This document shows, piece by piece, positions 1,726-63,949 of a stretch of 64,000 nucleotides of DNA. The stretch comes from Epiperipatus broadwayi (lineage: Eukaryota; Animalia; Onychophora). How positions within the stretch are numbered: the first letter of the stretch is position 1; every line of letters starts with the position of its first letter. Made by a program: the position numbers and the translations under genes. The stretch is taken from assembly GCA_028023455.1 (NCBI GenBank), contig JAQFVV010000005.1, positions 17,484,001 to 17,548,000 of the forward strand, written 5' to 3'. The notes beneath the pieces were generated by a model. It was not told the DNA's origin. It was given only the letters and a program-made list of their open reading frames with translations, and did no database searches.

Positions 1726-1940
1726 AACAGGCAAAACTCTCCATACAGTAGTGCCACCCTGTGCCAACCAGAGTAATCAATGGATGGTAGAAGGCTTGTG
1801 CATAAAATCCCCATATAGTACCTATTCATCCAATATCCCTAGACTAGTTTCTGGCTTGTGGCCTTTGTCAGTGAGGAGCCTTGTATCTGAGAGCGCTGCA
1901 CCTAGATCTTAGGATCTAATGCAATCCTCCAGCAGCCATC
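1726..1940 (-). mobile_element. Penelope-like element terminal-repeat fragment (family B) with a decayed hammerhead at 1837-1876
   Basis: Homologous to 32694-32910. The minus strand reads CCTCA CTGACAA AGGC CACAA GCC A GAAA CTAG TC TAGGG (core G to A change). Confidence 0.65.
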
Positions 1941-4900
1941 TTGTTTAGTGATTTAATAATAATAGTAATAGTAACATATACCTTAAATTATTTCAAAGAT
2001 GGTGACATTTAAAAATTTTCTATATAGCCCCAATTAAATTTTTTTGATTTATTAAAGGATTGCAAAAGATTTATAATAAAAAAAAGATGGATAATGGACA
2101 TAGTTTCACAAATGATAAAAAAAACAACAACATAAAAACGATTGTAATAAAATTAAAATCTGTAGAAGTAAAATATAATGCAATTTTCTTAAAAACAATT
2201 AATAAAACAATTTTATCCCCATTTATTAAAATATATCCATGTTTAAAAAGTGGTGATGGGGGGTGGGGTGGGTGGTCAAATACCAATGAAGCAGAAGTTT
2301 TTCCAACTTTTCCAAAGTAATTGACACTATGAATGAAAATATGCATATCAATAATCAGATCTTTTACACTGTTATATCAAATATCAATAACATAAACTCA
2401 AGTAAATGTCACTTGAAGCACTTTCCAATTAACACCCTTTTGTCAAAAAAAAAAATCAAATCATTAAATAATCTTCTATGAATTTTAAATAAGAAAGAGA
2501 CTATTTGATTATTCTAATATCTAAAATGTTTAATAAATAGTACTTGGTTTTTTTTTATTATTCTGTTCTGATATAAAAATATACAATGCAGCAAAATCTC
2601 TACATCCATTATTTTAAATATTATAGATTCATCAATTATTTAGCCATAGTTAAAACAAAATATTATTTGGAAATGCAAAGTATGTCTGCTAATATTACAA
2701 ACACACCAGAGGAAATCATATTTGGAATTGACAACTTTAATATAACTTAGACATTTCATCTTTGCATTTCATCATTATATAATTTTTAAATTACAACAAA
2801 ATTTATTAGAGATATGTATATATTGCATATGCATGGCAAACACATTTAAACTACAAGTGTGCATTTGTTATAAATATATAGCATATAGTAATGAATAAGA
2901 TATACATGTTATATTGAAAGCATGCTAGGTTGTAATATTACAGCTGAATATTTTTTTTAAAAAACTGCTTTTTCTGTAAATGTTTTAATTAACAGTCATG
3001 TACTACATTAGCTCAGAAAAAAAAAAGATTTATAGTTGAATTACAAATGATATATTAAATATGTACTATGAACCTTGATTCAAAGTAAATACTTGTATTA
3101 AATGAAAGTTCAATAGTTAATAAAATTTAAAAAAAATTCACTTCAAATGTATATAATAATATTAACCAAATGGTGACGATGATGATTTATAACATAAGTA
3201 CAAGACCTCCCAAAAATATTTTTGTTTTTCAATTTCAATAAAATAAAACTCTCAGGTGGCAAACCTTCTAACTAGAAAGTTTACTTTTGAAAAACTTATT
3301 AATACCTGATCATCATTATTTACAAATTATTACCACCATCCCTGCACGTCCCCAGTGGATTGCATGATTTCTCAGGGTTGTGGATAAAGTGTTATGTTTG
3401 AAATTATCAAGAAACAAACACAATTAAATGGATTAATAAAAAAATAATTTAACAATTTATTAACTGTATATAAATAAAAACTGTTGCATATATACTCACA
3501 ACTATTAATGCATATACAAAATATGAAGAATAATAGTAATAAAAATTATTTTTAATTTAAGTTTAAGGTCTTATAATATTAATAACATAAGATATTACCA
3601 TGTTAAATATTTAAACTGTTCCAAACCATGGTTTTCTGCAGATATTATTCTTTTAATATATTTATGGTCGTAATCACTATTTTGTTTTCCTTAGTTTTCC
3701 TAGTTTCTATCGATGTAAAGTTTTTTTCTCTAACATTATTAAACTGAAGTTATTGTACAAATTATCTAAAGTCAGTTTTTAAAAAAATTCAATATGGCAC
3801 CAGGACCATTAACTAGTTAAAATAGTGGCTATATTTGTTAGTGCATGCAATGTTATTATAGTCTAATTTATTGCTTTCATTTCAATAAATATATTTGTTC
3901 CTTATAAATCAGAAAAAATAGAGAAAATAATGTAATTAAGTTAATACTTAAAATATCTTAGCTCTTGTGGTGAATGTTTTAATCCTATAAAATAATATCT
4001 ATTGCTACAGATTATTCCTTATTATTATTCATTTCATTGATTTAGTAAATTTTTTAAAAATTTTCATAAGAGGGGAGTAGAGCAGTTAGCCATGACTATG
4101 ATTTTTTAAAACATATATATATATGTGATTTTTAAAAGAATAAATTTTTTTCATTTTAATCATATATAATTGCAGTCAAAAATCTGATTTTAAAAGAAAA
4201 TGAAATGTTGTGAATATTTGTTTCACGCGTAAAGTTGTTTTTTTCCATTTTAAGCTGTTTATTTTTTTTACAAAGTTGTTAAGATCAAGATCTGTTATTC
4301 ATATTTAAGTGAAAGATTATTTTAAATTAAAAAAAATGATTAAAATATTATAGGTAATTATTTTAGTTTTAATAATTGTCAAATAATGTGTTAATATGTA
4401 TTTAAAAGAACAAGGGAGATATAAGGTTTTAAGTTTAATAAAAAGTTTAATTATTTATGTTATATTATTATTTTTTCTTAATATTAAAGTTATTTTTAGA
4501 AATAGTTAAATGCAAGGCATTCAAAAACAAATGTTTAAAGGTGTGTGTGTAGGTATATAAAGTGAACCATGGAAAATTTTTATCATATGGTTTCTAGGAG
4601 ATAACCATAGCAAGTTCAGACATCATTAATTTTGTAGTAAGGGGGTTTTTTTACCCTTAATAAAAAAACTCAGACTTGATAAGAAACTTGATCCAACTAG
4701 ATTATTTTTAATAGATTTAAAAAATGGCCATAGTATTAAAATTATTAACCATGATAGTCAACTAGATAAAGATATTCTGAGAGGGCTTGTGAAGACTCTG
4801 TTCCAGTTGCTCATATTACTACCAACTCTGTGGCATAATGTTAAAATAAAACAAAAGTTTAAAATAAAATAAAAGCCCATCTAGTAAAAAAAAAATTTCT

Positions 4901-5883
4901 AAATCTAAGCATCGAAGAAGTAACATTTTAAAAATATCTGGAGGAAAAATGTTAATAGTTTATCAACATTTCCAAGAATTCTTAAATTTTTACATCCACC
5001 TGTAATCATCTAAACAAATTTCAAAAACAACACTTTTTATATAAAACTTTTAAAATTTAACCAAGATGAACTTTCTTTTAGTAATCTTCACTTTCCTACC
5101 TTGTCAACAATTATCAACTCGGAAACTCACTGAAAATCAGATTGAAAATAAACATTGAATTTAGAACTTTAAATAAAAACAAAAAAAGAAATAAAAAATA
5201 TTTTCATTAACAATAATTTTACTATGAATTGTTACGATGCATTTTTTTCTTCTTAGATCTCCCAAAGAAATGTTCTTTTAAAACAACAAAGGAAACATTA
5301 AAAAAAATTTTTTTTGCTTTATATGTAATGCATGTTTGCAAACATCCCATATAATAATTTTTGGTATGAATGCTTATTAGGGATTATATAATAATTGTTA
5401 AAATATATTTTCATTATAAACTTTAAATCTTATACATTATTACAGGATAAAAGAAATTGTGTTAATATATAGTGAGTCATTAAGGATACAAGTACTAAAG
5501 TAAGGCATTGGTTACTTTGTTTGATATGCAAATAATTTAAACAATGGGCTTCGTATACTTGGAATTGATATATGCAGTAATATATTTTTTATTTATATAA
5601 GAGATAGTGAATTCATCTTATGGCAAACTTGTTTTATCTGAGAGATGCAAATTCCTCTTATTGTGTAGCTATGTCATTTTTTATGCAAGAAATGATAAAA
5701 TTCCAATGTGCATGAAATATGTAGTAATATATTTACTTTACTTTTGCTACTTATTAAATAAGCCATTACTTGTGATCCTAAGTTTGTATGTTTAGAAGCT
5801 TCATATATTATATTTTGCATCAGTAGATAAGTTCAATGTATTATTAAAAAAACTTTTACCTGTGAAATATGTATAAAACTATA

Positions 5884-6100
5884 TTAAAACAGGCAAAACT
5901 CACTATATGTATTGCCACACACAACAAGCTAGAGTAATCAATGGATGCCAGAAGACTTGGGCATAAAATCCCCATCTAGCGCCTACTCATCCAATAGCCC
6001 CAGACTAGTTTCTTGTGGCAATACGTATAGTGAGTTTTGCCTGTTTTAACAAGTTATACACAAGCATAAGAAGTGGTGGTCATGTGATATAAAACTATAT
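5884..6100. mobile_element. Family B Penelope-like fragment with an inverted terminal arm
   Basis: The 5884-5919 arm is the reverse complement of 6014-6049. The junction falls inside the hammerhead stem II at TGTGGC microhomology. The tail matches 33078-33120. Confidence 0.6.
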
Positions 6101-52659: not shown

Positions 52660-53305
52660 GAGACTGTAATATATGCATTTTAAATTAAACGTACATACGA
52701 AAGTGTCTTATTCTATAATATTATTTTATTGTTAAATCTTTAAATTTTGCTACTAATATTTTAATCATAGATGTTAGCTTGAAATGCAATCAATTGTAAC
52801 AAACTAATTAAACAGATAACGAAGGAATTTAATTAGCAAAACCCAATTTAATTAAATCCCACCTTAATTTATAAGAGTTACTCCAGAAAACAAAAGAAAG
52901 CAAACAGATAAAGGGGGCCATTTTGAAAAGATCAACAGAGTGAGTACAGAGCGTTTTCAGTGAATTCGAGCAGAGCATCCGTTGCAAGAAAACAGCGTGG
53001 GAATTGTGAATTACCCTCATTGAGAAAGGAGAGAAGTTAGACGTAGAAACTATACGTTCAGAATTATAGTGTGAGTATTCGTTATCGTGTGTACATAGTG
53101 TACTTTTCTAACACAGCTCGGCGGTAATCAGAACTTTGTATAAACTGTAAATTAGTGAACATTGAACTGTTTTGACAATTAAACTAACTAGTTCGCAAAT
53201 TAACTTTTCTGTGCAGTAATTGAAGAATCAATATACTGCAATCTGGCACAGTCAAATTAGTTGAACCTAAAAAACCACAGTGAATAACCAGCTATTAATA
53301 AGAAA

Positions 53306-54130
53306 ATGTCAGTTTTCGGACAAAACTCTATTGGAGAGTTCGACATGGAAAACGCGGCCAATTGGCCACTATACCTTATAGAAAATTTCTTCATTTTAAA
53401 TGGCATTGAAAACAACAAGTGGAAAGTAGCTGCCCTCTTATGTTTCTCGAGAAAAAAAATGATTGAAATCATCAATAAATTATACCAAAATCCCGTAGAT
53501 GAGAATGTACCATTTAAGGAATTATCCCAACGGCTAAACAAATTTTTTAGCCCTCGCCCTTCCCGCCATATAGCACGCCTACAGTTACAAAATAGAAAAC
53601 AACTAAATAGTGAAACAATCAAACAATATAATTTAGCACTCAAGGAGCTAGCAAAAGATTGTGTGTATGGTGATTTCATAGAAGAAATATTATTAGATCA
53701 ACTGCTATGGGGAATGTCTGACGACAGGCTCAGACAACATCTGTTAACAGAGGCAGACCTAACCTACGAAAGCGCTATAAAGAAAGAAATAATGTATGAG
53801 CTAATTCTAGAACAGGCGCAGGCCTTCAGATCAAAAGATAAAAGTTACGAGTAAGTTTTCAAAACCGATAAAGCAGAAATACGTTCGTTTCAACGGGAAC
53901 CCCAGAGAAATAACAAAATTAAATGCTACTGCTGTGGTAAAACAGGCCACATAGCTAAAGACTGCAAATGGAAACAAGAAATGTGATTCAAATGCCGAAC
54001 TAAGGGCCACCTTGCACGTGCGTGCAGACAATCACCAGAAAGGGATGGTCGACAAAGGAAATATAGTCCAGACACAAATGGTAGAGCATATAGTATTAAA
54101 TATATATCTACCAAAGGGGAAAGAGATAGG
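53306..54130 (+). pseudogene. gag: Gypsy-type gag with two CCHC zinc knuckles (53924-53965 and 53984-54025)
   Basis: Gag capsid-like pattern (F..NGI...K...LL; F.EL..RL..FF.P; RKQ..SETI.QY...LKELA.DC.YG), then CYCCGKTGHIAKDC and *FKCRTKGHLARAC. Premature stops at 53852-53854 and 53984-53986, all in one frame. Confidence 0.88.
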
Positions 54131-54701
54131 ACCATTTTGCAAGCACAAACAGAGATCATTAAATTACAAAATCAATTTGAAGATGATCGGAAAGACTCGG
54201 AACAGAAGCAGTGTAAAGAGCAAGATTCTCCGAAAGAGCAACTCCAGATTTACATACAGATGATAGATATGTTGGTCGCAGAAAAAACAGCTGCAATCAT
54301 CCCTAGCACAAAGTCAGCAGGCCATAAAACAGAAATCAGCTAAACTCGAAGAATTTCAAGGAAGATTGAAGGTTTCTAGACAACGTGTAATAGAACTTGA
54401 AAAACAAAACTCAGAACTTAGTGAAAAATTGCAAAGTAAGCTCGCAATGTCAGAATTATCTGCACAGGTAGAGAGTTGGCAGCTCTATGAAATGGAGCCA
54501 CAAGAAAAAATGGCCGAAAGTGAAAATGAATTAGACATTTCCGAAGATTTTTTAGAAGAGTGGCAATCTTTAACCAGTGAGCTGCCAGATACAAAAACTG
54601 TAGAGCAGGGAAAAAATCAGACTCTCTCAAAGCAGGAGAAAAAGGCACTCAGGGCGGCAAGGAAAAAGAATTTGCACAAATTTCAAGGTTACATCTGTTA
54701 A
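54131..54701 (+). pseudogene. In-frame C-terminal extension including a Golgin A2 (GM130)-like coiled-coil segment at about 54137-54465
   Basis: Restoring 2 nt at about 54290 gives KEQLQIYIQMIDMLVAEKTELQSSLAQSQQAIKQKSAKLEEFQGRLKVSRQRVIELEK. This closely follows the conserved GM130 segment (human, from memory: [57 protein letters not shown]). Confidence 0.8.
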
Positions 54702-55376
54702 TCGTAAAAATAAAGTTTTACTCCAGTTTGGGAAAAGAAAAAATAAAGCACTGAGGAGTCGCATTATGGGGTTTTCTGGAGTAAGGGGAGGTATTGTAAT
54801 ATATGCATTTTAAATTAAACGTACATACGAAAATGTCTTATTCTAAAATATTATTTTATTGTTAAATCTTTAAATTTTGCTACTAATATTTTAATAATAG
54901 ACATTAGCTTAAAATGCAATCAATTGTAACAAACTAATTAAACAGATAACGAAGGAATTTAATTAGCAAAACCCAATTTAATTAAATCCCACCTTAATTT
55001 ATAAGAGTTACTCCAGAAAACAAAAGAAAGCAAACAGATAAAAGGGGGCCATTTTGAAAAGATCAACAGAGTGAATACAGAGCATTTTCAGTGAATTCGA
55101 GCAGAGCATCCGTTACAAGAAAACAGCGTGGGAATTGCGAATTACCCTCATTGAGAAAGAAGAGAAGTTAGACGTAGAAACTATACATTCAGAATTATAG
55201 TGCGGGTATTCGTTATCATGTGTACATAGTGTATTTTTCTAACACAGCTCGACAGTAATCAGAACTTTGTATAAACTGTAAATTAGTGAACATCGAACTG
55301 TTTTGACAATTAAACTAACTAGTTCGCAAATTAACTTTTCTGTGCAATAATTGAAGAATCAATATACTGCAGAGAC

Positions 55377-56600: not shown

Positions 56601-56744
56601 TCAAGCAAAATTTTGAAATCAAGTTCTTAATATATTTATATCAAATGGAATTCTTTCAAATTTTGAATATGTGTTATAAATCTATGACAATGAAATGTTT
56701 CAGATTAGACTCCTAATTTTCAGGGATGCATTTGAGAAAGTGGT

Positions 56745-57750
56745 ATCATCATCATCATCATTATCAACCATTATCAATCCACTGCAGGATGAAGGTCTCT
56801 CCAAGTTTAATCCATCTCTCTGATCTTTAGCTTCTCTTCTCCACATCACCCCTACACATTTTCTTATTTCATCCATCCATCTTACATGTGGTCTCCTTCT
56901 GGGTCTTTTACAATCTCTTGGAATCCAGTTTAAAATTTCAATTGTCCATCTATTATCATCTCTTCTAGCAATATGTCCAGCCCAACTCCACTTCAATCTT
57001 TTAATTTTTTCAATGAGGTCAGTAACACCTGTTTGTTCTCTTACCCATACATTGCGTTTTCGATCTCTTCTTGTTACTCCCAACATACATCTCTCCATAC
57101 TTCTTTGAGTGGTCTGAAGTCTCTGTATTGATCTTCTATTAAGTGTCCAAGTCTCAGATCCATAAGTAAGAACTGGTAAAACACATTTGTTAAAAACTTT
57201 TCTTTTCAAACACATAGGCATATTTCCTTTTAATATCAAGTTATTTCTACCAAAAGTACTCCAACCAAGTTTAATTCTATGATTAATTTCCTCTATTATG
57301 TTTCCATCTGTATTAATAATCTGACCAAGGTATTTGTAACTCTTAACTCCTTCTAATTCATCATAATCAATCTTTATTTTCATATTTTGAGCAAATCGAT
57401 TAAACATTACTTTAGTCTTTTTAACATTTATCTTTTTAGTCGTACTTTCCTACTTTCATCTGATAACTCCTGCAACATTTCCTGCAGCTCGGAAGCATTA
57501 TTTGCAAAAACAACTACATCATCTGTGAAATCTAAATGACTTAAATAATCTCCATTTACTTTCACTCCTTTAGTTTCCCATTTTAATCCACAAAATACTT
57601 CTTGCAGCACTACTGTAAAAAGTTTTGGAGATATGGAGTCACCTTGTCTTACACCTTTCTCAATGTTGACTTTCCCAGTATCATTATGTAATCTAATTGT
57701 TGCTGTTGCATTTTTATAAATATTCTTTAAAATATGACAATATCCTATAT
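56745..57750 (-). mobile_element. 5'-truncated RTE-clade LINE (RT domains and C-terminus) with a (GAT)n tail
   Basis: KGVRQGDSISPKLF, HLDFTDDVV, YKYLG, LTYGSETW and KWSWAGHIAR motifs. One frameshift near 57430. ATC repeats at 56745-56762. Confidence 0.92.
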
Positions 57751-61160: not shown

Positions 61161-62890
61161 ATATAATTATATATGCTTTTATCAAACAAATATCTTTAAT
61201 CTCTTATTTTAAAGTATATATTTATAAATTAATGGGGAAATTAAACAATGGTCTTTTTTTTTCAATTTCCAATAAAACATTTACAGATACAAACCCTCTA
61301 GATTATCCATGCTCAGTTTTTATTACAGTTTTTGCCTTTACTCACTGCATAGAACTAAAGAAGCCATATTGTGAAAATTAACCAGTGACTCCGTGCAATG
61401 GGCAAAAGCAAAAACTAAAATGAAAAGTGAGCATAGAGCACATACTATATTAGTGCCAAATGTACATTTATTTTCAAATTTAAGGAAGATTACTTGATCT
61501 GTTTAATAAGAAACAATAAGACTAACTTCCAATAGTTAATATTGATTCAGGTTTACATAAAAAATATTTTATAAAAATAAAAAACAGCAAATTCTTTTAA
61601 AAGATTAATAGTTATTGCAAATAAATATACTTTATTTTAAAGTAAACATAATGTAAGCAATTATTTAAAAAAATAAACTATTGTGGAATACATATCTATT
61701 TGCATATGAATATTAACAGAAGCCTGTATCTATAGTGGCAGAGTGATAAATGCAAAATCTAAAAATATCCAGATTGAAGCTCAACTATGTCATTTCAGGT
61801 GCTTGATGTCTCATGTTGCACCATTAAAATACTATTAATTTATGATTTTTGGGAATATTCACTTTGTTTGATGCACTTTACCACAGTGTATTTTGAAGCC
61901 AAGAAAAAACTTTCTCATCCAAGTGCAATCCCATATTTTTACAAAAGTAAAATAATAAATAGTTTAAGTTTCATACTTTCTTCAGAGTTTGGAATCATGC
62001 TAACATATCAGCTATTTATAATCCGATTTTTATAAAATTACTGTCCAATAAAAAAATGTCTGGTCAACTTCAAAATTCAAAGCAAAACAGCAGACTAATA
62101 TATCACTCTAGCGAATTTGTGTGGATGTCTTGGTTATGCCAAAATAGTTTACAGCCATAAATCATATGCAAACATTGTCTGTATGTAAAAGTATGTGACC
62201 ATATATATGTGTGTGTATAAATTACATTAGAAGAGCTCTCTGCTTAAACAAACCAATAGAATAACAGCAATCCATTGTCAAGAGAACATTACAATTAGGC
62301 AGTAAATGGTATCCTTTTATTGCTAAATTTTACTGTTGCTTTGACAAGTTTTCTGATATTTTAGTGCTTCTGTTTATGCATGAAGGCTGTTCTGATGTAA
62401 TTTACATATGTATTTCATAAAACATGTTTTTGAAAGCAACAATCTGAGGATGTTATTTTATTGAAATGTCAGAAAATTTACTTTAATATTATTTTATTAA
62501 ACATGGTTGCTCCCAAAACCATGTTTTATAAAACATCTTTTTGCCCATGAGAACATTTATTTCAATATATATAACCACACTACATATTAGTAATTGATAA
62601 TAAATAAAGATTTTTAGTTTACTTCTAGCATGCTGATTAGGTATTGTAAACTTCTGACCCATATAATGATAGTGATTGCATTTGAAATACAAGTTAATTA
62701 AAAGAAATAGCCTGGTTTTAATGTGATCACAATTTATGATATTATGGGTTTACATTTGTTTAGAATTATACTAAAAGCACCATAATTCTGATTAGCTTGT
62801 ACATATACAATGATTACATTTTGTAGTATAGTCTCTCTTACTTTAATGGTTTATATAAAACAAAAAATGAAGATGAGGGTACATAAATAT

Positions 62891-63587
<697 letters not shown>

Positions 63588-63949
63588 AAGAGAGAAAGTA
63601 GACAGAAAAAGTTTTTGATAATAATATCTAAAAAAAAGAAGTATATATCAATAGTCATCAGCAATTTTCAAGTAACTCTGAAACTGTAGCAATTTTATTT
63701 AACAAAGGAGCCATTAACTGTCAGCAATATTCATCTATAAAATAATTGTATTTAATTTTCATAAAAATTATTTTCATTTATTATTAAAATAAATATATCA
63801 CATTATATGATAGCAGAAATAGTTATTCTTATTTGTGTGCACAGCTTTCTTCTTCTTCTTCCTTTTCCTATGTATTGATTTCTACTTTAACCTATCATAC
63901 CATTTACAACTTTCTTAAACACTTTATCAATACTATTTATTTATATCAA

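What the first reader, a model, noticed from the sequence alone, without database searches (positions are those of the whole stretch)
52660..55376. LTR retroelement whose Gag is fused in frame to an apparently captured host Golgi tether (GM130/Golgin A2) in place of pol
Seen in sequence: a complete element (LTRs about 96% identical, GAGAC TSD, PBS-like site, PPT) with only 1554 bp of internal sequence and no protease, RT or integrase. One frame runs from ATG 53306 through Gag and two CCHC knuckles into a coiled coil. Repairing two stops and one 2-nt deletion (about 54290) gives a single ~465-aa protein. From memory, QxEIxxLQNQFEDDRKxxEQKQ..EQ...KEQLQIYIQMIDMLVAEKT[E]LQSSLAQSQQAIKQKS..LEEFQGRLKVSRQRVIELEK-QNSELSEKL-QSKLAMSEL follows the conserved N-terminal coiled coil of GOLGA2/GM130 in order, intron-less and with two internal deletions. 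Inference: a host mRNA piece was captured by template switching before this copy retrotransposed, so a Gag-golgin non-autonomous family (TR-GAG-like) was mobilised in trans. The golgin moiety might help multimerise Gag or localise particles at the Golgi or microtubule-organising sites. I know of no described example.
Basis: partly seen in the sequence, partly recalled or inferred. Interest (0 to 1): 0.92.

Follow-up and report, generated by a model that had tools for sequence, protein, structure and literature searches.

The report
Gag-only retrotransposon carrying captured golgin exons
A defective jumping gene in this animal genome swapped its enzyme genes for spliced exons of the host Golgi protein GM130/GOLGA2, fused them in frame to its capsid gene, and then spread to hundreds of copies on two different retrotransposon backbones.

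Summary
Window 52660-55376 is a complete non-autonomous Ty3/gypsy-type LTR element: 576/577-bp LTRs, a GAGAC target duplication, 1554 bp inside and no pol.

Its Gag (capsid fold plus two CCHC knuckles) runs in frame into about 300 nt that are 87-91% identical to exons of the host GOLGA2 gene on another contig. A native exon-exon junction is present, so spliced mRNA was captured.

- **Family 1.** About 120 copies carry this junction. In 4 of 30 sampled copies the 466-467-aa frame is still open. LTR divergence is 0.007-0.063.
- **Family 2 (new here).** About 220 copies have unrelated LTRs and a non-sister Gag. They carry other exons of the same capture plus the same 3' tail of unknown origin.
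- **Module total.** About 420 copies carry the golgin-plus-tail module, which has changed backbone.

All golgin pieces keep the host frame and no family-wide stop exists (neutral P about 0.014). However, amino-acid constraint on the golgin part is not detectable. The mechanism, LTR-mediated retroposition, is known; the copy number, the in-frame Gag fusion and the backbone exchange are unusual. The helper element, expression and function remain unshown. Four first-reader notes flagged other copies in this genome.

The parts
52660..52664 (.). Target-site duplication GAGAC (left)
   Evidence: Read directly. The same 5 bases follow the 3' LTR. Other copies have different 5-bp duplications.
52665..53240 (+). 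5' LTR, 576 bp, TG..CA
   Evidence: Direct repeat with the 3' LTR, 95-96% identical. K = 0.039.
53244..53253 (+). PBS-like site TGGCACAGTC, 3 nt after the LTR (most copies read TGGCGCAGTCGAACC)
   Evidence: Sequence reading. The primer tRNA was not identified.
53306..54121 (+). Gag: capsid-like helical domain plus two CCHC knuckles (53924-53965 and 53984-54025). Broken here by TAA at 53852-53854 and by TGA at 53984-53986, the latter in the first Cys codon of knuckle 2.
   Evidence: - Pfam: PF03732 (E 2.8e-4, below its curated cut-off) and PF00098.
- 13,350 Gag relatives were found, and the long ones checked are Ty3/gypsy Gag-Pol.
- An AF2 model of a natural open copy has pLDDT 82-93 over residues 10-175.
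- That model matches dArc1, PEG10, PNMA2 and Ty3 capsids.
54122..54163 (+). Start of the shared module. Probably the end of an upstream host exon (called A-2 here); the exact Gag/host switch point is unresolved.
   Evidence: This stretch is about 82-85% alike between families 1 and 2, whereas Gag is 61-63% alike. It aligns to rotifer golgin residues 48-60. The host exon itself was not found.
54164..54339 (+). Host GOLGA2 exon A, complete, with a 2-nt gap after 54288 that shifts the frame in this copy
   Evidence: 87% identity to L041 3976-3791. The match begins at the host acceptor and ends at the host donor. Contigs of other copies carry 2 more letters at 54288.
54340..54401 (+). Host exon B, 5' part, joined to exon A at the native splice junction (host intron of about 430 bp absent)
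   Evidence: 90% identity to L041 3359-3293. The junction reads ..AAATCAG|CT.AAC...
54402..54435 (+). Host exon C, inner part. The B-to-C switch lies in a 10-11-nt microhomology at 54392-54402.
   Evidence: 91% identity to L040 5907-5864.
54436..54459 (+). Host exon D, 3' part. The C-to-D switch lies in a 7-nt microhomology at 54429-54435.
   Evidence: 85% identity to L040 5753-5713. A host-type spliced contig diverges from the element after 54459.
54460..54701 (+). Tail of unknown origin: about 80 codons (acidic, predicted disordered, then a basic helix), with stop TAA at 54699-54701. Shared with family 2.
   Evidence: - No homologue was found.
- It is 82% identical to the family 2 tail.
- Between families omega is 0.28, against 1.55 and 0.65 in the two off frames.
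54702..54794 (+). 3' untranslated stretch and polypurine tract (GGAGTAAGGGGAGG at 54778-54791)
   Evidence: Sequence reading. The tract is conserved in 28 of 30 copies and is similar in family 2.
54795..55371 (+). 3' LTR, 577 bp
55372..55376 (.). Target-site duplication GAGAC (right)

Best explanation
This is one copy of a non-autonomous Ty3/gypsy-type LTR retrotransposon.

**Origin (inferred from structure).** During reverse transcription inside a particle, the polymerase probably switched from the element's RNA to a co-packaged, spliced host GOLGA2 (GM130) mRNA and back. This replaced protease, RT, RNase H and integrase with golgin coiled-coil exons. A further 240-nt tail of unknown source is also present. 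The result is one Gag-golgin reading frame.

**Shown here:**
- The golgin part matches host exons at 87-91% and carries native exon-exon junctions.
- Later in-frame deletions at 7-11-nt microhomologies trimmed it differently in two lineages.
- The golgin-plus-tail module sits on two backbones whose LTRs are unrelated and whose Gags are not sisters. This implies recombination between retroelement lineages.
- About 420 copies carry the module, and the sampled family 1 copies have independent 5-bp target duplications.

**Inferred:**
- Copies are mobilised in trans by Pol of related autonomous gypsy elements, which are abundant and intact in this genome.
- The frame through the module has been kept open by selection in the active lineages (my odds about 60%).
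- The golgin part serves as a sequence-tolerant, dimerising coiled-coil extension at the C-terminal end of Gag, where Pol would otherwise begin. It would help the defective element's own Gag and RNA get into helper particles.

The confidence of 0.8 applies to the capture, the family structure and trans-mobilisation. The functional role of the module is less certain, as stated above.
For: **Structure**
- LTRs, target duplication, PPT and a 1554-bp interior without pol.

**Host origin**
- The GOLGA2 gene lies on contig C6259, minus strand, with PF15070 exons downstream.
- Exons A, B, C and D match the element at 87-91% DNA identity, with the A|B splice junction exact.
- A composite of the host pieces aligns without gaps over 300 nt at a mean of 88.6% identity.
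- The best outside protein hits are golgins that carry PF15070.

**Family**
- All 40 scored genomic matches are near full length at 89-94% identity.
- Junction 30-mers occur 122 times (family 1) and 224 times (family 2). The shared D|tail 27-mer occurs 420 times. Reversed control patterns occur 0 times.
- LTR K ranges from 0.007 to 0.063 and target duplications differ between copies.
- 4 of 30 copies have the open 466-467-aa frame, and these include the two youngest.

**Family 2**
- It carries exons A-1, B+1, C and D with native B+1|C and C|D junctions, plus the same tail.
- Gag dS between the families is saturated, while tail dS is 0.52-0.58.
- In the Gag tree, family 2 groups with seven autonomous elements (98/98 support) to the exclusion of family 1. 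The AU test rejects family 1 plus family 2 as one clade, p = 0.008.

**Frame maintenance**
- Every golgin piece is read in the host frame.
- No family-wide stop exists. The simulated neutral chance of that is 0.24 x 0.185 x 0.32, about 0.014.
- All six indels in the module are multiples of three.

**Protein**
- Capsid fold and knuckles, then one helix over residues 275-414.
- Homodimer prediction for residues 275-467: score 0.54, best of 3 controls 0.00. This mark was reached by 21 of 30 proteins solved as pairs of one chain and by 0 of 23 solved as single chains. The runs agree in at least 70% of contacts and the partner pLDDT is at least 69. Contacts are in register over 278-385.

**Helpers and mechanism**
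- At least 49,849 first-look gypsy pol candidates exist, many with open 1,000-1,350-aa frames.
- The mechanism is documented in animals (PMC5131818).
Against: - **No amino-acid constraint on the golgin part.** Omega is 0.72 among all copies, 1.23 among young copies and 0.41 against the host. The off-frame controls are 0.42-1.04, 0.47-0.95 and 0.51-0.58 respectively.
- **Some disabling lesions are shared between copies** (11 of 59 distinct lesions). Broken copies may therefore also have been copied, or CpG and homopolymer sites may mutate repeatedly.
- **The in-frame deletions may be biased.** They lie between stretches that code similar peptides, which favours in-frame outcomes mechanically.
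- **No helper with matching Gag or LTR was found.** The best Gag identity is 53% for family 1 and 63% for family 2.
- **Neither outer switch point is resolved.** The 5' Gag/host junction and the tail's source are both unknown.
- **Expression is not shown.** The two runs that hold the family are only guessed to be RNA.
- **Sampling is thin.** The 30 family 1 copies are the ones most like the window copy, family 2 rests on six loci, and the Gag N-half tree has a single family 2 row.
Confidence: 0.8

Rival explanations
1. Pure passenger. The capture and amplification happened as described, but the golgin-plus-tail module does nothing for the element. It hitch-hiked because the backbone kept its LTRs, PBS, PPT, packaging signal and Gag. 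The open frame would reflect youth, chance, or only a need to avoid early termination on the genomic RNA, not a protein function.
For: - Golgin-part omega cannot be told apart from the off-frame controls.
- The open copies are simply the youngest.
- The neutral chance of no family-wide stop is only about 0.014, which is not overwhelming.
- Shared lesions suggest that broken copies may still be copied.
- LTR-captured host pieces are usually neutral retrocopies (PMC5131818).
Against: - The module persisted through a change of backbone, and through divergence of about 0.12 per site from the host, in two lineages.
- All six indels are in frame.
- Tail omega between families is 0.28, against 1.55 and 0.65 off frame.
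- Transduced pieces in LTR elements are normally present in one or a few copies (PMC7264820), not about 420.
Confidence: 0.3
2. Two independent captures. Families 1 and 2 each picked up GOLGA2 mRNA separately, so no backbone exchange occurred.
For: - Their Gags are not sisters and their LTRs are unrelated.
- They hold partly different exons.
Against: - Both share the same non-golgin tail, the same exon D|tail junction, about 40 nt beyond the stop, and the same upstream piece before exon A or A-1, all at 80-93% identity.
- The shared 27-mer across the D|tail junction occurs 420 times.
Confidence: 0.04
3. Host-side function. One or more open Gag-golgin copies are domesticated host genes, for example a GM130-binding restriction factor or a dominant-negative golgin, and the rest are dead relatives.
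For: - Open 466-467-aa frames exist.
- The coiled coil keeps 70-75% identity to the host segment, so it could pair with GM130.
- Gag domestication is common, as with Arc, PEG10 and PNMA, which share this fold.
Against: - The open copies are the youngest insertions, with near-identical LTRs. They are not old conserved single loci.
- No orthologous protein was found in the 5.8-billion-protein search.
Confidence: 0.04
4. No capture. The resemblance to GM130 is generic coiled-coil similarity.
For: Pfam finds no golgin domain in the pieces.
Against: - DNA identity to four host exons in order is 87-91%, with splice junctions exact.
- PF15070 models a later part of golgins, so its absence here is expected.
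Confidence: 0.01

Closest known systems
LTR-mediated retroposition chimeras in animals (Tan et al. 2016, PMC5131818)
   Same: - A spliced host mRNA piece replaces part of the internal ORFs of an LTR retrotransposon.
- Template switching at short similarities is the proposed mechanism.
- The chimera can be copied again as a non-autonomous element.
- Frames often stay as in the parental gene.
   Different: - Those cases are young, with one or a few insertion sites.
- Here about 420 copies exist, with a long in-frame fusion to a complete Gag, later internal trimming, and transfer of the captured module to a second backbone.
Maize Bs1 (Elrouby and Bureau 2001, 2010, as described in PMC5131818 and PMC7264820)
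   Same: A pol-less LTR element that carries exon pieces of host genes and encodes a chimeric protein. [quoted passage not shown]
   Different: - Bs1 has 1-5 copies in Zea and pieces of three genes, one of them out of frame.
- It is a plant element.
- The original papers were not available to me.
TR-GAG elements of plants (term used in PMC13570524 and others)
   Same: Terminal repeats plus a Gag ORF, no pol, mobilised in trans, sometimes abundant.
   Different: TR-GAG carry no host-derived coding extension. They are defined in plants, whereas this is an animal Ty3/gypsy relative with a Gag-host fusion.
Gag-onc fusions of replication-defective acutely transforming retroviruses (general knowledge; capture mechanism cited in PMC5131818)
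   Same: Host mRNA is captured by recombination during reverse transcription. It forms an in-frame Gag-host fusion that replaces pol and depends on a helper.
   Different: - Those are infectious vertebrate retroviruses selected for cell transformation.
- Here the element is a germline-amplified retrotransposon, and the captured piece is a structural coiled coil without a known signalling role.
GM130 / GOLGA2 golgin
   Same: The captured 100 codons are the conserved N-terminal coiled coil (the motif EQLQ.HIQTIG.LVAEKT.LQ ... LKASR.RV.ELE). They are 40-51% identical to insect and rotifer golgins and 70-75% identical to the host's own exons.
   Different: - This is only a trimmed fragment.
- It lacks the PF15070 region.
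- By my recollection of GM130 biology, not tested here, it also lacks the p115-binding N terminus and the GRASP65-binding C terminus that place GM130 on the Golgi.

Membership tests
LTR retrotransposon, Ty3/gypsy (Metaviridae) lineage | Two LTRs in direct orientation ending TG..CA, flanked by a short target duplication | tested here: met
   LTRs of 576 and 577 bp, 95-96% identical, with a 5-bp GAGAC duplication.
LTR retrotransposon, Ty3/gypsy (Metaviridae) lineage | Gag with a retroviral-type capsid fold and CCHC nucleocapsid knuckles, related to Gag of PR-RT-RH-IN elements | tested here: met
   Pfam hits. 13,350 relatives, of which the long ones checked have the order PR-RT-RH-IN. The fold matches Ty3, Arc and PEG10 capsids.
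LTR retrotransposon, Ty3/gypsy (Metaviridae) lineage | Pol (protease, reverse transcriptase, RNase H, integrase) | tested here: not met
   The 1554-bp interior holds no such domains. The element is therefore a non-autonomous derivative, not a full member.
LTR retrotransposon, Ty3/gypsy (Metaviridae) lineage | Primer binding site complementary to a tRNA 3' end, and a polypurine tract | tested here: inconclusive
   The polypurine tract is clear and conserved. The site after the 5' LTR begins TGG, but no matching tRNA was identified.
LTR-mediated retrocopy / transduction chimera | Internal host-derived segment without introns, co-linear with the parental mRNA | tested here: met
   Native junctions A|B (family 1) and B+1|C and C|D (family 2). 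The host introns of about 430 bp, 3.5 kb and 73 bp are absent.
LTR-mediated retrocopy / transduction chimera | Microsimilarity at the element/mRNA switch points | tested here: inconclusive
   Neither outer switch point could be placed. Host exon A-2 was not found and the tail's source is unknown. Microhomologies were seen only at the later internal deletions.
LTR-mediated retrocopy / transduction chimera | Secondary retroposition as a non-autonomous element | tested here: met
   Hundreds of dispersed copies with distinct target duplications and LTR ages.
TR-GAG (plant non-autonomous class) | Terminal repeats plus Gag only, no other coding capacity | tested here: not met
   Gag is present and pol is absent. 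However, the ORF continues for about 190 codons of host-derived and unknown sequence.
Golgin GM130/GOLGA2 | Golgin subfamily A conserved domain (PF15070) and full-length rod with terminal binding sites | tested here: not met
   No PF15070 hit in the element, while the host gene has it in downstream exons. Only the upstream coiled-coil exons are present.

The most novel reading that the evidence does not exclude
The golgin-plus-tail module is an adaptive, portable accessory domain of parasitic Gag-only retroelements. In this reading a host coiled coil was taken over by a transposon and kept in frame. It was then passed between unrelated backbones because it improves entry of the defective element's Gag and RNA into helper particles, or ties assembly to host GM130 at the cis-Golgi. 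That would be a host-to-transposon exaptation, the reverse of Gag domestication.
Probability: 0.3. Interest if true: 0.8.

Novelty: new variant of a known kind. Interest (0 to 1): 0.66.

Why it matters
Host genes captured by LTR retrotransposons are usually seen as one-off retrocopies, and the reviews read here say they occur in one or a few copies. This case differs in three ways:
- The captured piece is fused in frame to a complete Gag.
- It has lasted through divergence of about 0.12 substitutions per site from the host, compared with 0.007-0.063 between the LTRs of the sampled insertions.
- It sits on two different backbones and has reached about 420 copies.

That makes it a natural test case for two open questions. 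The first is whether non-autonomous elements that keep their own Gag gain from extra protein modules. The second is how often modules move between retroelement lineages by recombination in shared particles. It also gives a dated series of template-switch and microhomology deletions on a known host template. If the fusion protein is made, a Gag carrying a GM130-type coiled coil could interact with the host Golgi tether, which would be testable cell biology.

Tried and rejected
- **Pfam on the four ORF pieces.** No golgin family was hit. This is explained by PF15070 modelling a later part of the protein.
- **First comparison with host exons.** Comparing the element with the PF15070 exons found nothing, because the captured exons lie 43 kb upstream.
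- **Origin of the tail.**
  - Nothing in 80 kb of the host locus.
  - No protein at E up to 10.
  - Only generic coiled-coil look-alikes in the ESM Atlas.
  - No similarity to exon E at the DNA level.
  - My recalled likeness of its basic end to the GM130 N-terminal motif is no better than shuffles, p 0.12-0.6. That idea is rejected.
- **Host exon upstream of A-1 (A-2).** Not found in 36 kb.
- **Direct helper element.** Thirteen autonomous relatives were sampled. Gag identity reached only 47-53% to family 1 and up to 63% to family 2, with no LTR similarity.
- **dN/dS among copies.** Gag is mildly constrained (0.36-0.39, against 0.56-0.96 off frame). The golgin part is not distinguishable from the controls. 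This test has little power because most differences arise after insertion.
- **Copy number.** The 1367 first-look candidates overstate the family. Junction-specific counts give 122, 224 and 420.
- **Expression.** No run is on record as RNA. Two small runs, guessed to be RNA, hold fragmentary contigs over 27 of 30 bins and also hold a spliced host exon D|E contig. A processed pseudogene could mimic that contig.
- **Other.** Rfam found nothing in the window. The Bs1 paper is not held.
Full report
**1. The object**

Window 52660-55376 is a complete LTR element. The 5-bp GAGAC duplication lies at 52660-52664 and 55372-55376. The LTRs are 52665-53240 and 54795-55371, run TG..CA and are 95-96% identical (K 0.039).

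A polypurine tract lies at 54778-54791. A TGG-initiated PBS-like site lies 3 nt after the 5' LTR. The interior is 1554 bp.

Pfam sees only a retrotransposon Gag (E 2.8e-4, below its curated cut-off) and a CCHC knuckle in it. No ORF could hold PR, RT or IN.

One frame runs from the ATG at 53306. It is interrupted by TAA at 53852 and by TGA at 53984, and it shifts after 54288.

**2. The golgin part is host GOLGA2, captured as spliced mRNA**

A PF15070 (golgin subfamily A) scan of the window's own 5.6-Gb assembly found one multi-exon gene. It lies on contig C6259, minus strand.

The captured exons lie 43 kb upstream in the same orientation. At the DNA level:

| Element | Host exon (my label) | Identity | Host locus |
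|---|---|---|---|
| 54164-54339 | A, complete | 87% | L041 3976-3791 |
| 54340-54401 | B, 5' part | 90% | L041 3359-3293 |
| 54402-54435 | C, inner part | 91% | L040 5907-5864 |
| 54436-54459 | D, 3' part | 85% | L040 5753-5713 |

The host A-B intron of about 430 bp, with GT..AG ends, is missing exactly. A composite of these host pieces aligns without a gap to 300 nt of a natural open copy. Mean identity to 30 copies is 88.6%.

The B-to-C and C-to-D joins lie inside exons, at 10-11-nt and 7-nt imperfect microhomologies. They are therefore deletions or template switches, not splice variants.

A search of 5.8 billion proteins with a natural open copy returned golgins that carry PF15070: a beetle at E 2.7e-8, a rotifer and others. 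These align at 40-51% identity over the conserved motif.

Generic coiled-coil resemblance is therefore excluded.

**3. It is a transposed family**

The internal region has at least 40 near-full-length matches at 89-94% identity. A 30-mer across the family-specific upstream junction occurs 122 times at up to 3 mismatches. The reversed control occurs 0 times.

Thirty copies were studied:
- They have their own 5-bp duplications.
- Their LTR divergence ranges from 0.007 to 0.063, median 0.034.
- Four have the whole 466-467-aa frame open, including the two with the most similar LTRs.
- Of 59 distinct disabling lesions, 48 are private to one copy.

**4. A second family and a portable module**

Contigs of two public runs laid on the element left a loose end that did not fit family 1. 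That 30-mer occurs 224 times in the genome.

The six loci fetched define family 2. Its features are:
- LTRs with no detectable similarity to family 1.
- A Gag 52-57% identical to family 1 in protein and 61-63% in DNA, with saturated dS.
- Gag fused in frame to host exons A-1 (L041 9511-9431), B+1 (L040 about 9462-9397), C and D. The B+1|C and C|D splice junctions are native. One microhomology deletion runs from the end of A-1 into B+1.

After exon D both families continue with the same 80-codon tail and about 40 nt beyond the stop. This stretch is 78-93% identical in 45-nt windows. Both families also share the stretch before exon A or A-1.

A 27-mer across the D|tail junction occurs 420 times.

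One capture of a longer piece (A-2 to D, plus tail) therefore preceded both families. Each family then trimmed it differently.

The Gags do not share that history:
- In the N-terminal half, family 2 groups with seven autonomous elements (98/98 support) to the exclusion of family 1.
- The AU test rejects a family 1 plus family 2 clade, p = 0.008.
- Two caveats apply. The group was named after the tree was seen, and family 2 is represented by a single row.

The simplest reading is that the module, or the Gag-LTR backbone, was exchanged by recombination between co-packaged RNAs.

**5. Selection**

Omega estimates, with the two off-frame values as controls:

| Comparison | Gag | Golgin | Tail | Off-frame range |
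|---|---|---|---|---|
| Among all 30 copies | 0.39 | 0.72 | 0.47 | 0.42-1.04 |
| Among young copies of different sublineages | 0.36 | 1.23 | 0.42 | 0.47-1.08 |
| Host versus element | - | 0.41 | - | 0.51, 0.58 |
| Tail, between families | - | - | 0.28 | 1.55, 0.65 |

Amino-acid constraint is therefore plausible for Gag and for the tail. It is not detectable for the golgin part.

The frame itself, however, looks maintained:
- Every golgin piece in both families is read in the host's frame.
- All six indels in the module are multiples of three.
- No family-wide stop exists.
- Simulated neutral substitution at the observed numbers gives 0.24, 0.185 and 0.32 for the three segments. The product is about 0.014.
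- The other two frames of the same 300 nt hold 9 and 10 stops.

The caveat is that deletions between stretches coding similar peptides are biased to be in frame.

**6. The protein**

An AF2 model of a natural open copy shows the following:
- A confident helical domain over residues 10-175.
- Two knuckles.
- A disordered linker.
- One helix over residues 275-414.
- A disordered acidic stretch.
- A short basic helix.

The first domain matches dArc1, PEG10, PNMA2 and Ty3 capsids.

Two copies of residues 275-467 are predicted to pair in register over 278-385. The score was 0.54 and the best of 3 controls was 0.00. This mark was reached by 21 of 30 proteins solved as pairs of one chain and by 0 of 23 solved as single chains. 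The runs agree in at least 70% of contacts and the partner pLDDT is at least 69. For eukaryotes the tool warns that a pass may come from memory. This supports a dimeric coiled coil but does not show one.

**7. Helpers and expression**

The genome holds at least 49,849 first-look gypsy pol candidates. Many have open frames of 1,000-1,350 aa.

Thirteen were sampled. They form a clade with the two Gag-golgin families, but none is close enough to be the direct helper.

No run on record as RNA holds the element. Two small runs from two coded organisms hold contigs over most of it. They also hold a spliced host exon D|E contig, which suggests they are RNA. An intron-less GOLGA2 pseudogene also exists, however.

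**8. Comparison with what is known**

Capture of host mRNA by LTR elements through template switching, followed by re-copying of the chimera, is documented in flies, mosquito, fish, birds and mammals. The same paper describes it for maize Bs1, which has 1-5 copies (PMC5131818).

A review states that transduced ORFs in LTR elements occur in one or a few copies (PMC7264820).

This finding is therefore a new variant of a known kind. Three features stand out:
- A full Gag-host fusion frame.
- About 420 copies.
- The same captured module on two backbones.

Four first-reader notes had flagged other copies in this genome.

**9. Limits**

All queries were natural copies or pieces of the window. The window has 24-33% GC.

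Noticed in passing
L058-L063 (for example G000:C1:5714233-5717262); the element spans about 1-2330 of each locus: A second Gag-golgin family. It has LTRs of at least 360 bp that are unrelated to those of the window's element. It carries host exons A-1, B+1, C and D plus the same tail. About 224 copies by a 30-mer count. Three of the six loci have the module frame open.
   Followed up: yes
L032 = G000:C12508:3192370-3195690 (match at 3193870-3194190, minus strand): An intron-less match to PF15070 positions 115-222 with four stops. It spans what are two separate exons in the C6259 gene. It is probably a processed GOLGA2 pseudogene unrelated to the Gag-golgin families.
   Followed up: no
L045 = G000:C6262:37000-44500: An apparently intact autonomous Ty3/gypsy element. 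It has a 1353-aa Gag-Pol frame at 1875-5936 and LTRs of over 500 bp that contain a 107-bp tandem unit. Its Gag is 48% identical to the window element's Gag. The genome search gave at least 49,849 first-look pol candidates.
   Followed up: partly
window 56700-57407 (-), 62810-63601 (+), 62843-63664 (-): Three ORFs of 235-273 aa with no Pfam match. The last two overlap on opposite strands.
   Followed up: partly
window 1-64000: Very AT-rich sequence throughout, 24-33% GC in 4-kb windows. The element is the GC maximum at 33%. No Rfam family reaches its gathering score in the window.
   Followed up: partly
Codons 363, 224 and 51 of the open-copy frame, seen in L003, L015, L019, L020, L023-L025, L027 and others: The same stop or 1-nt deletion recurs in 4-5 copies from different sublineages. 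This could be recurrent CpG or homopolymer mutation, assembly error, or copying of already broken sources. It was not resolved.
   Followed up: partly
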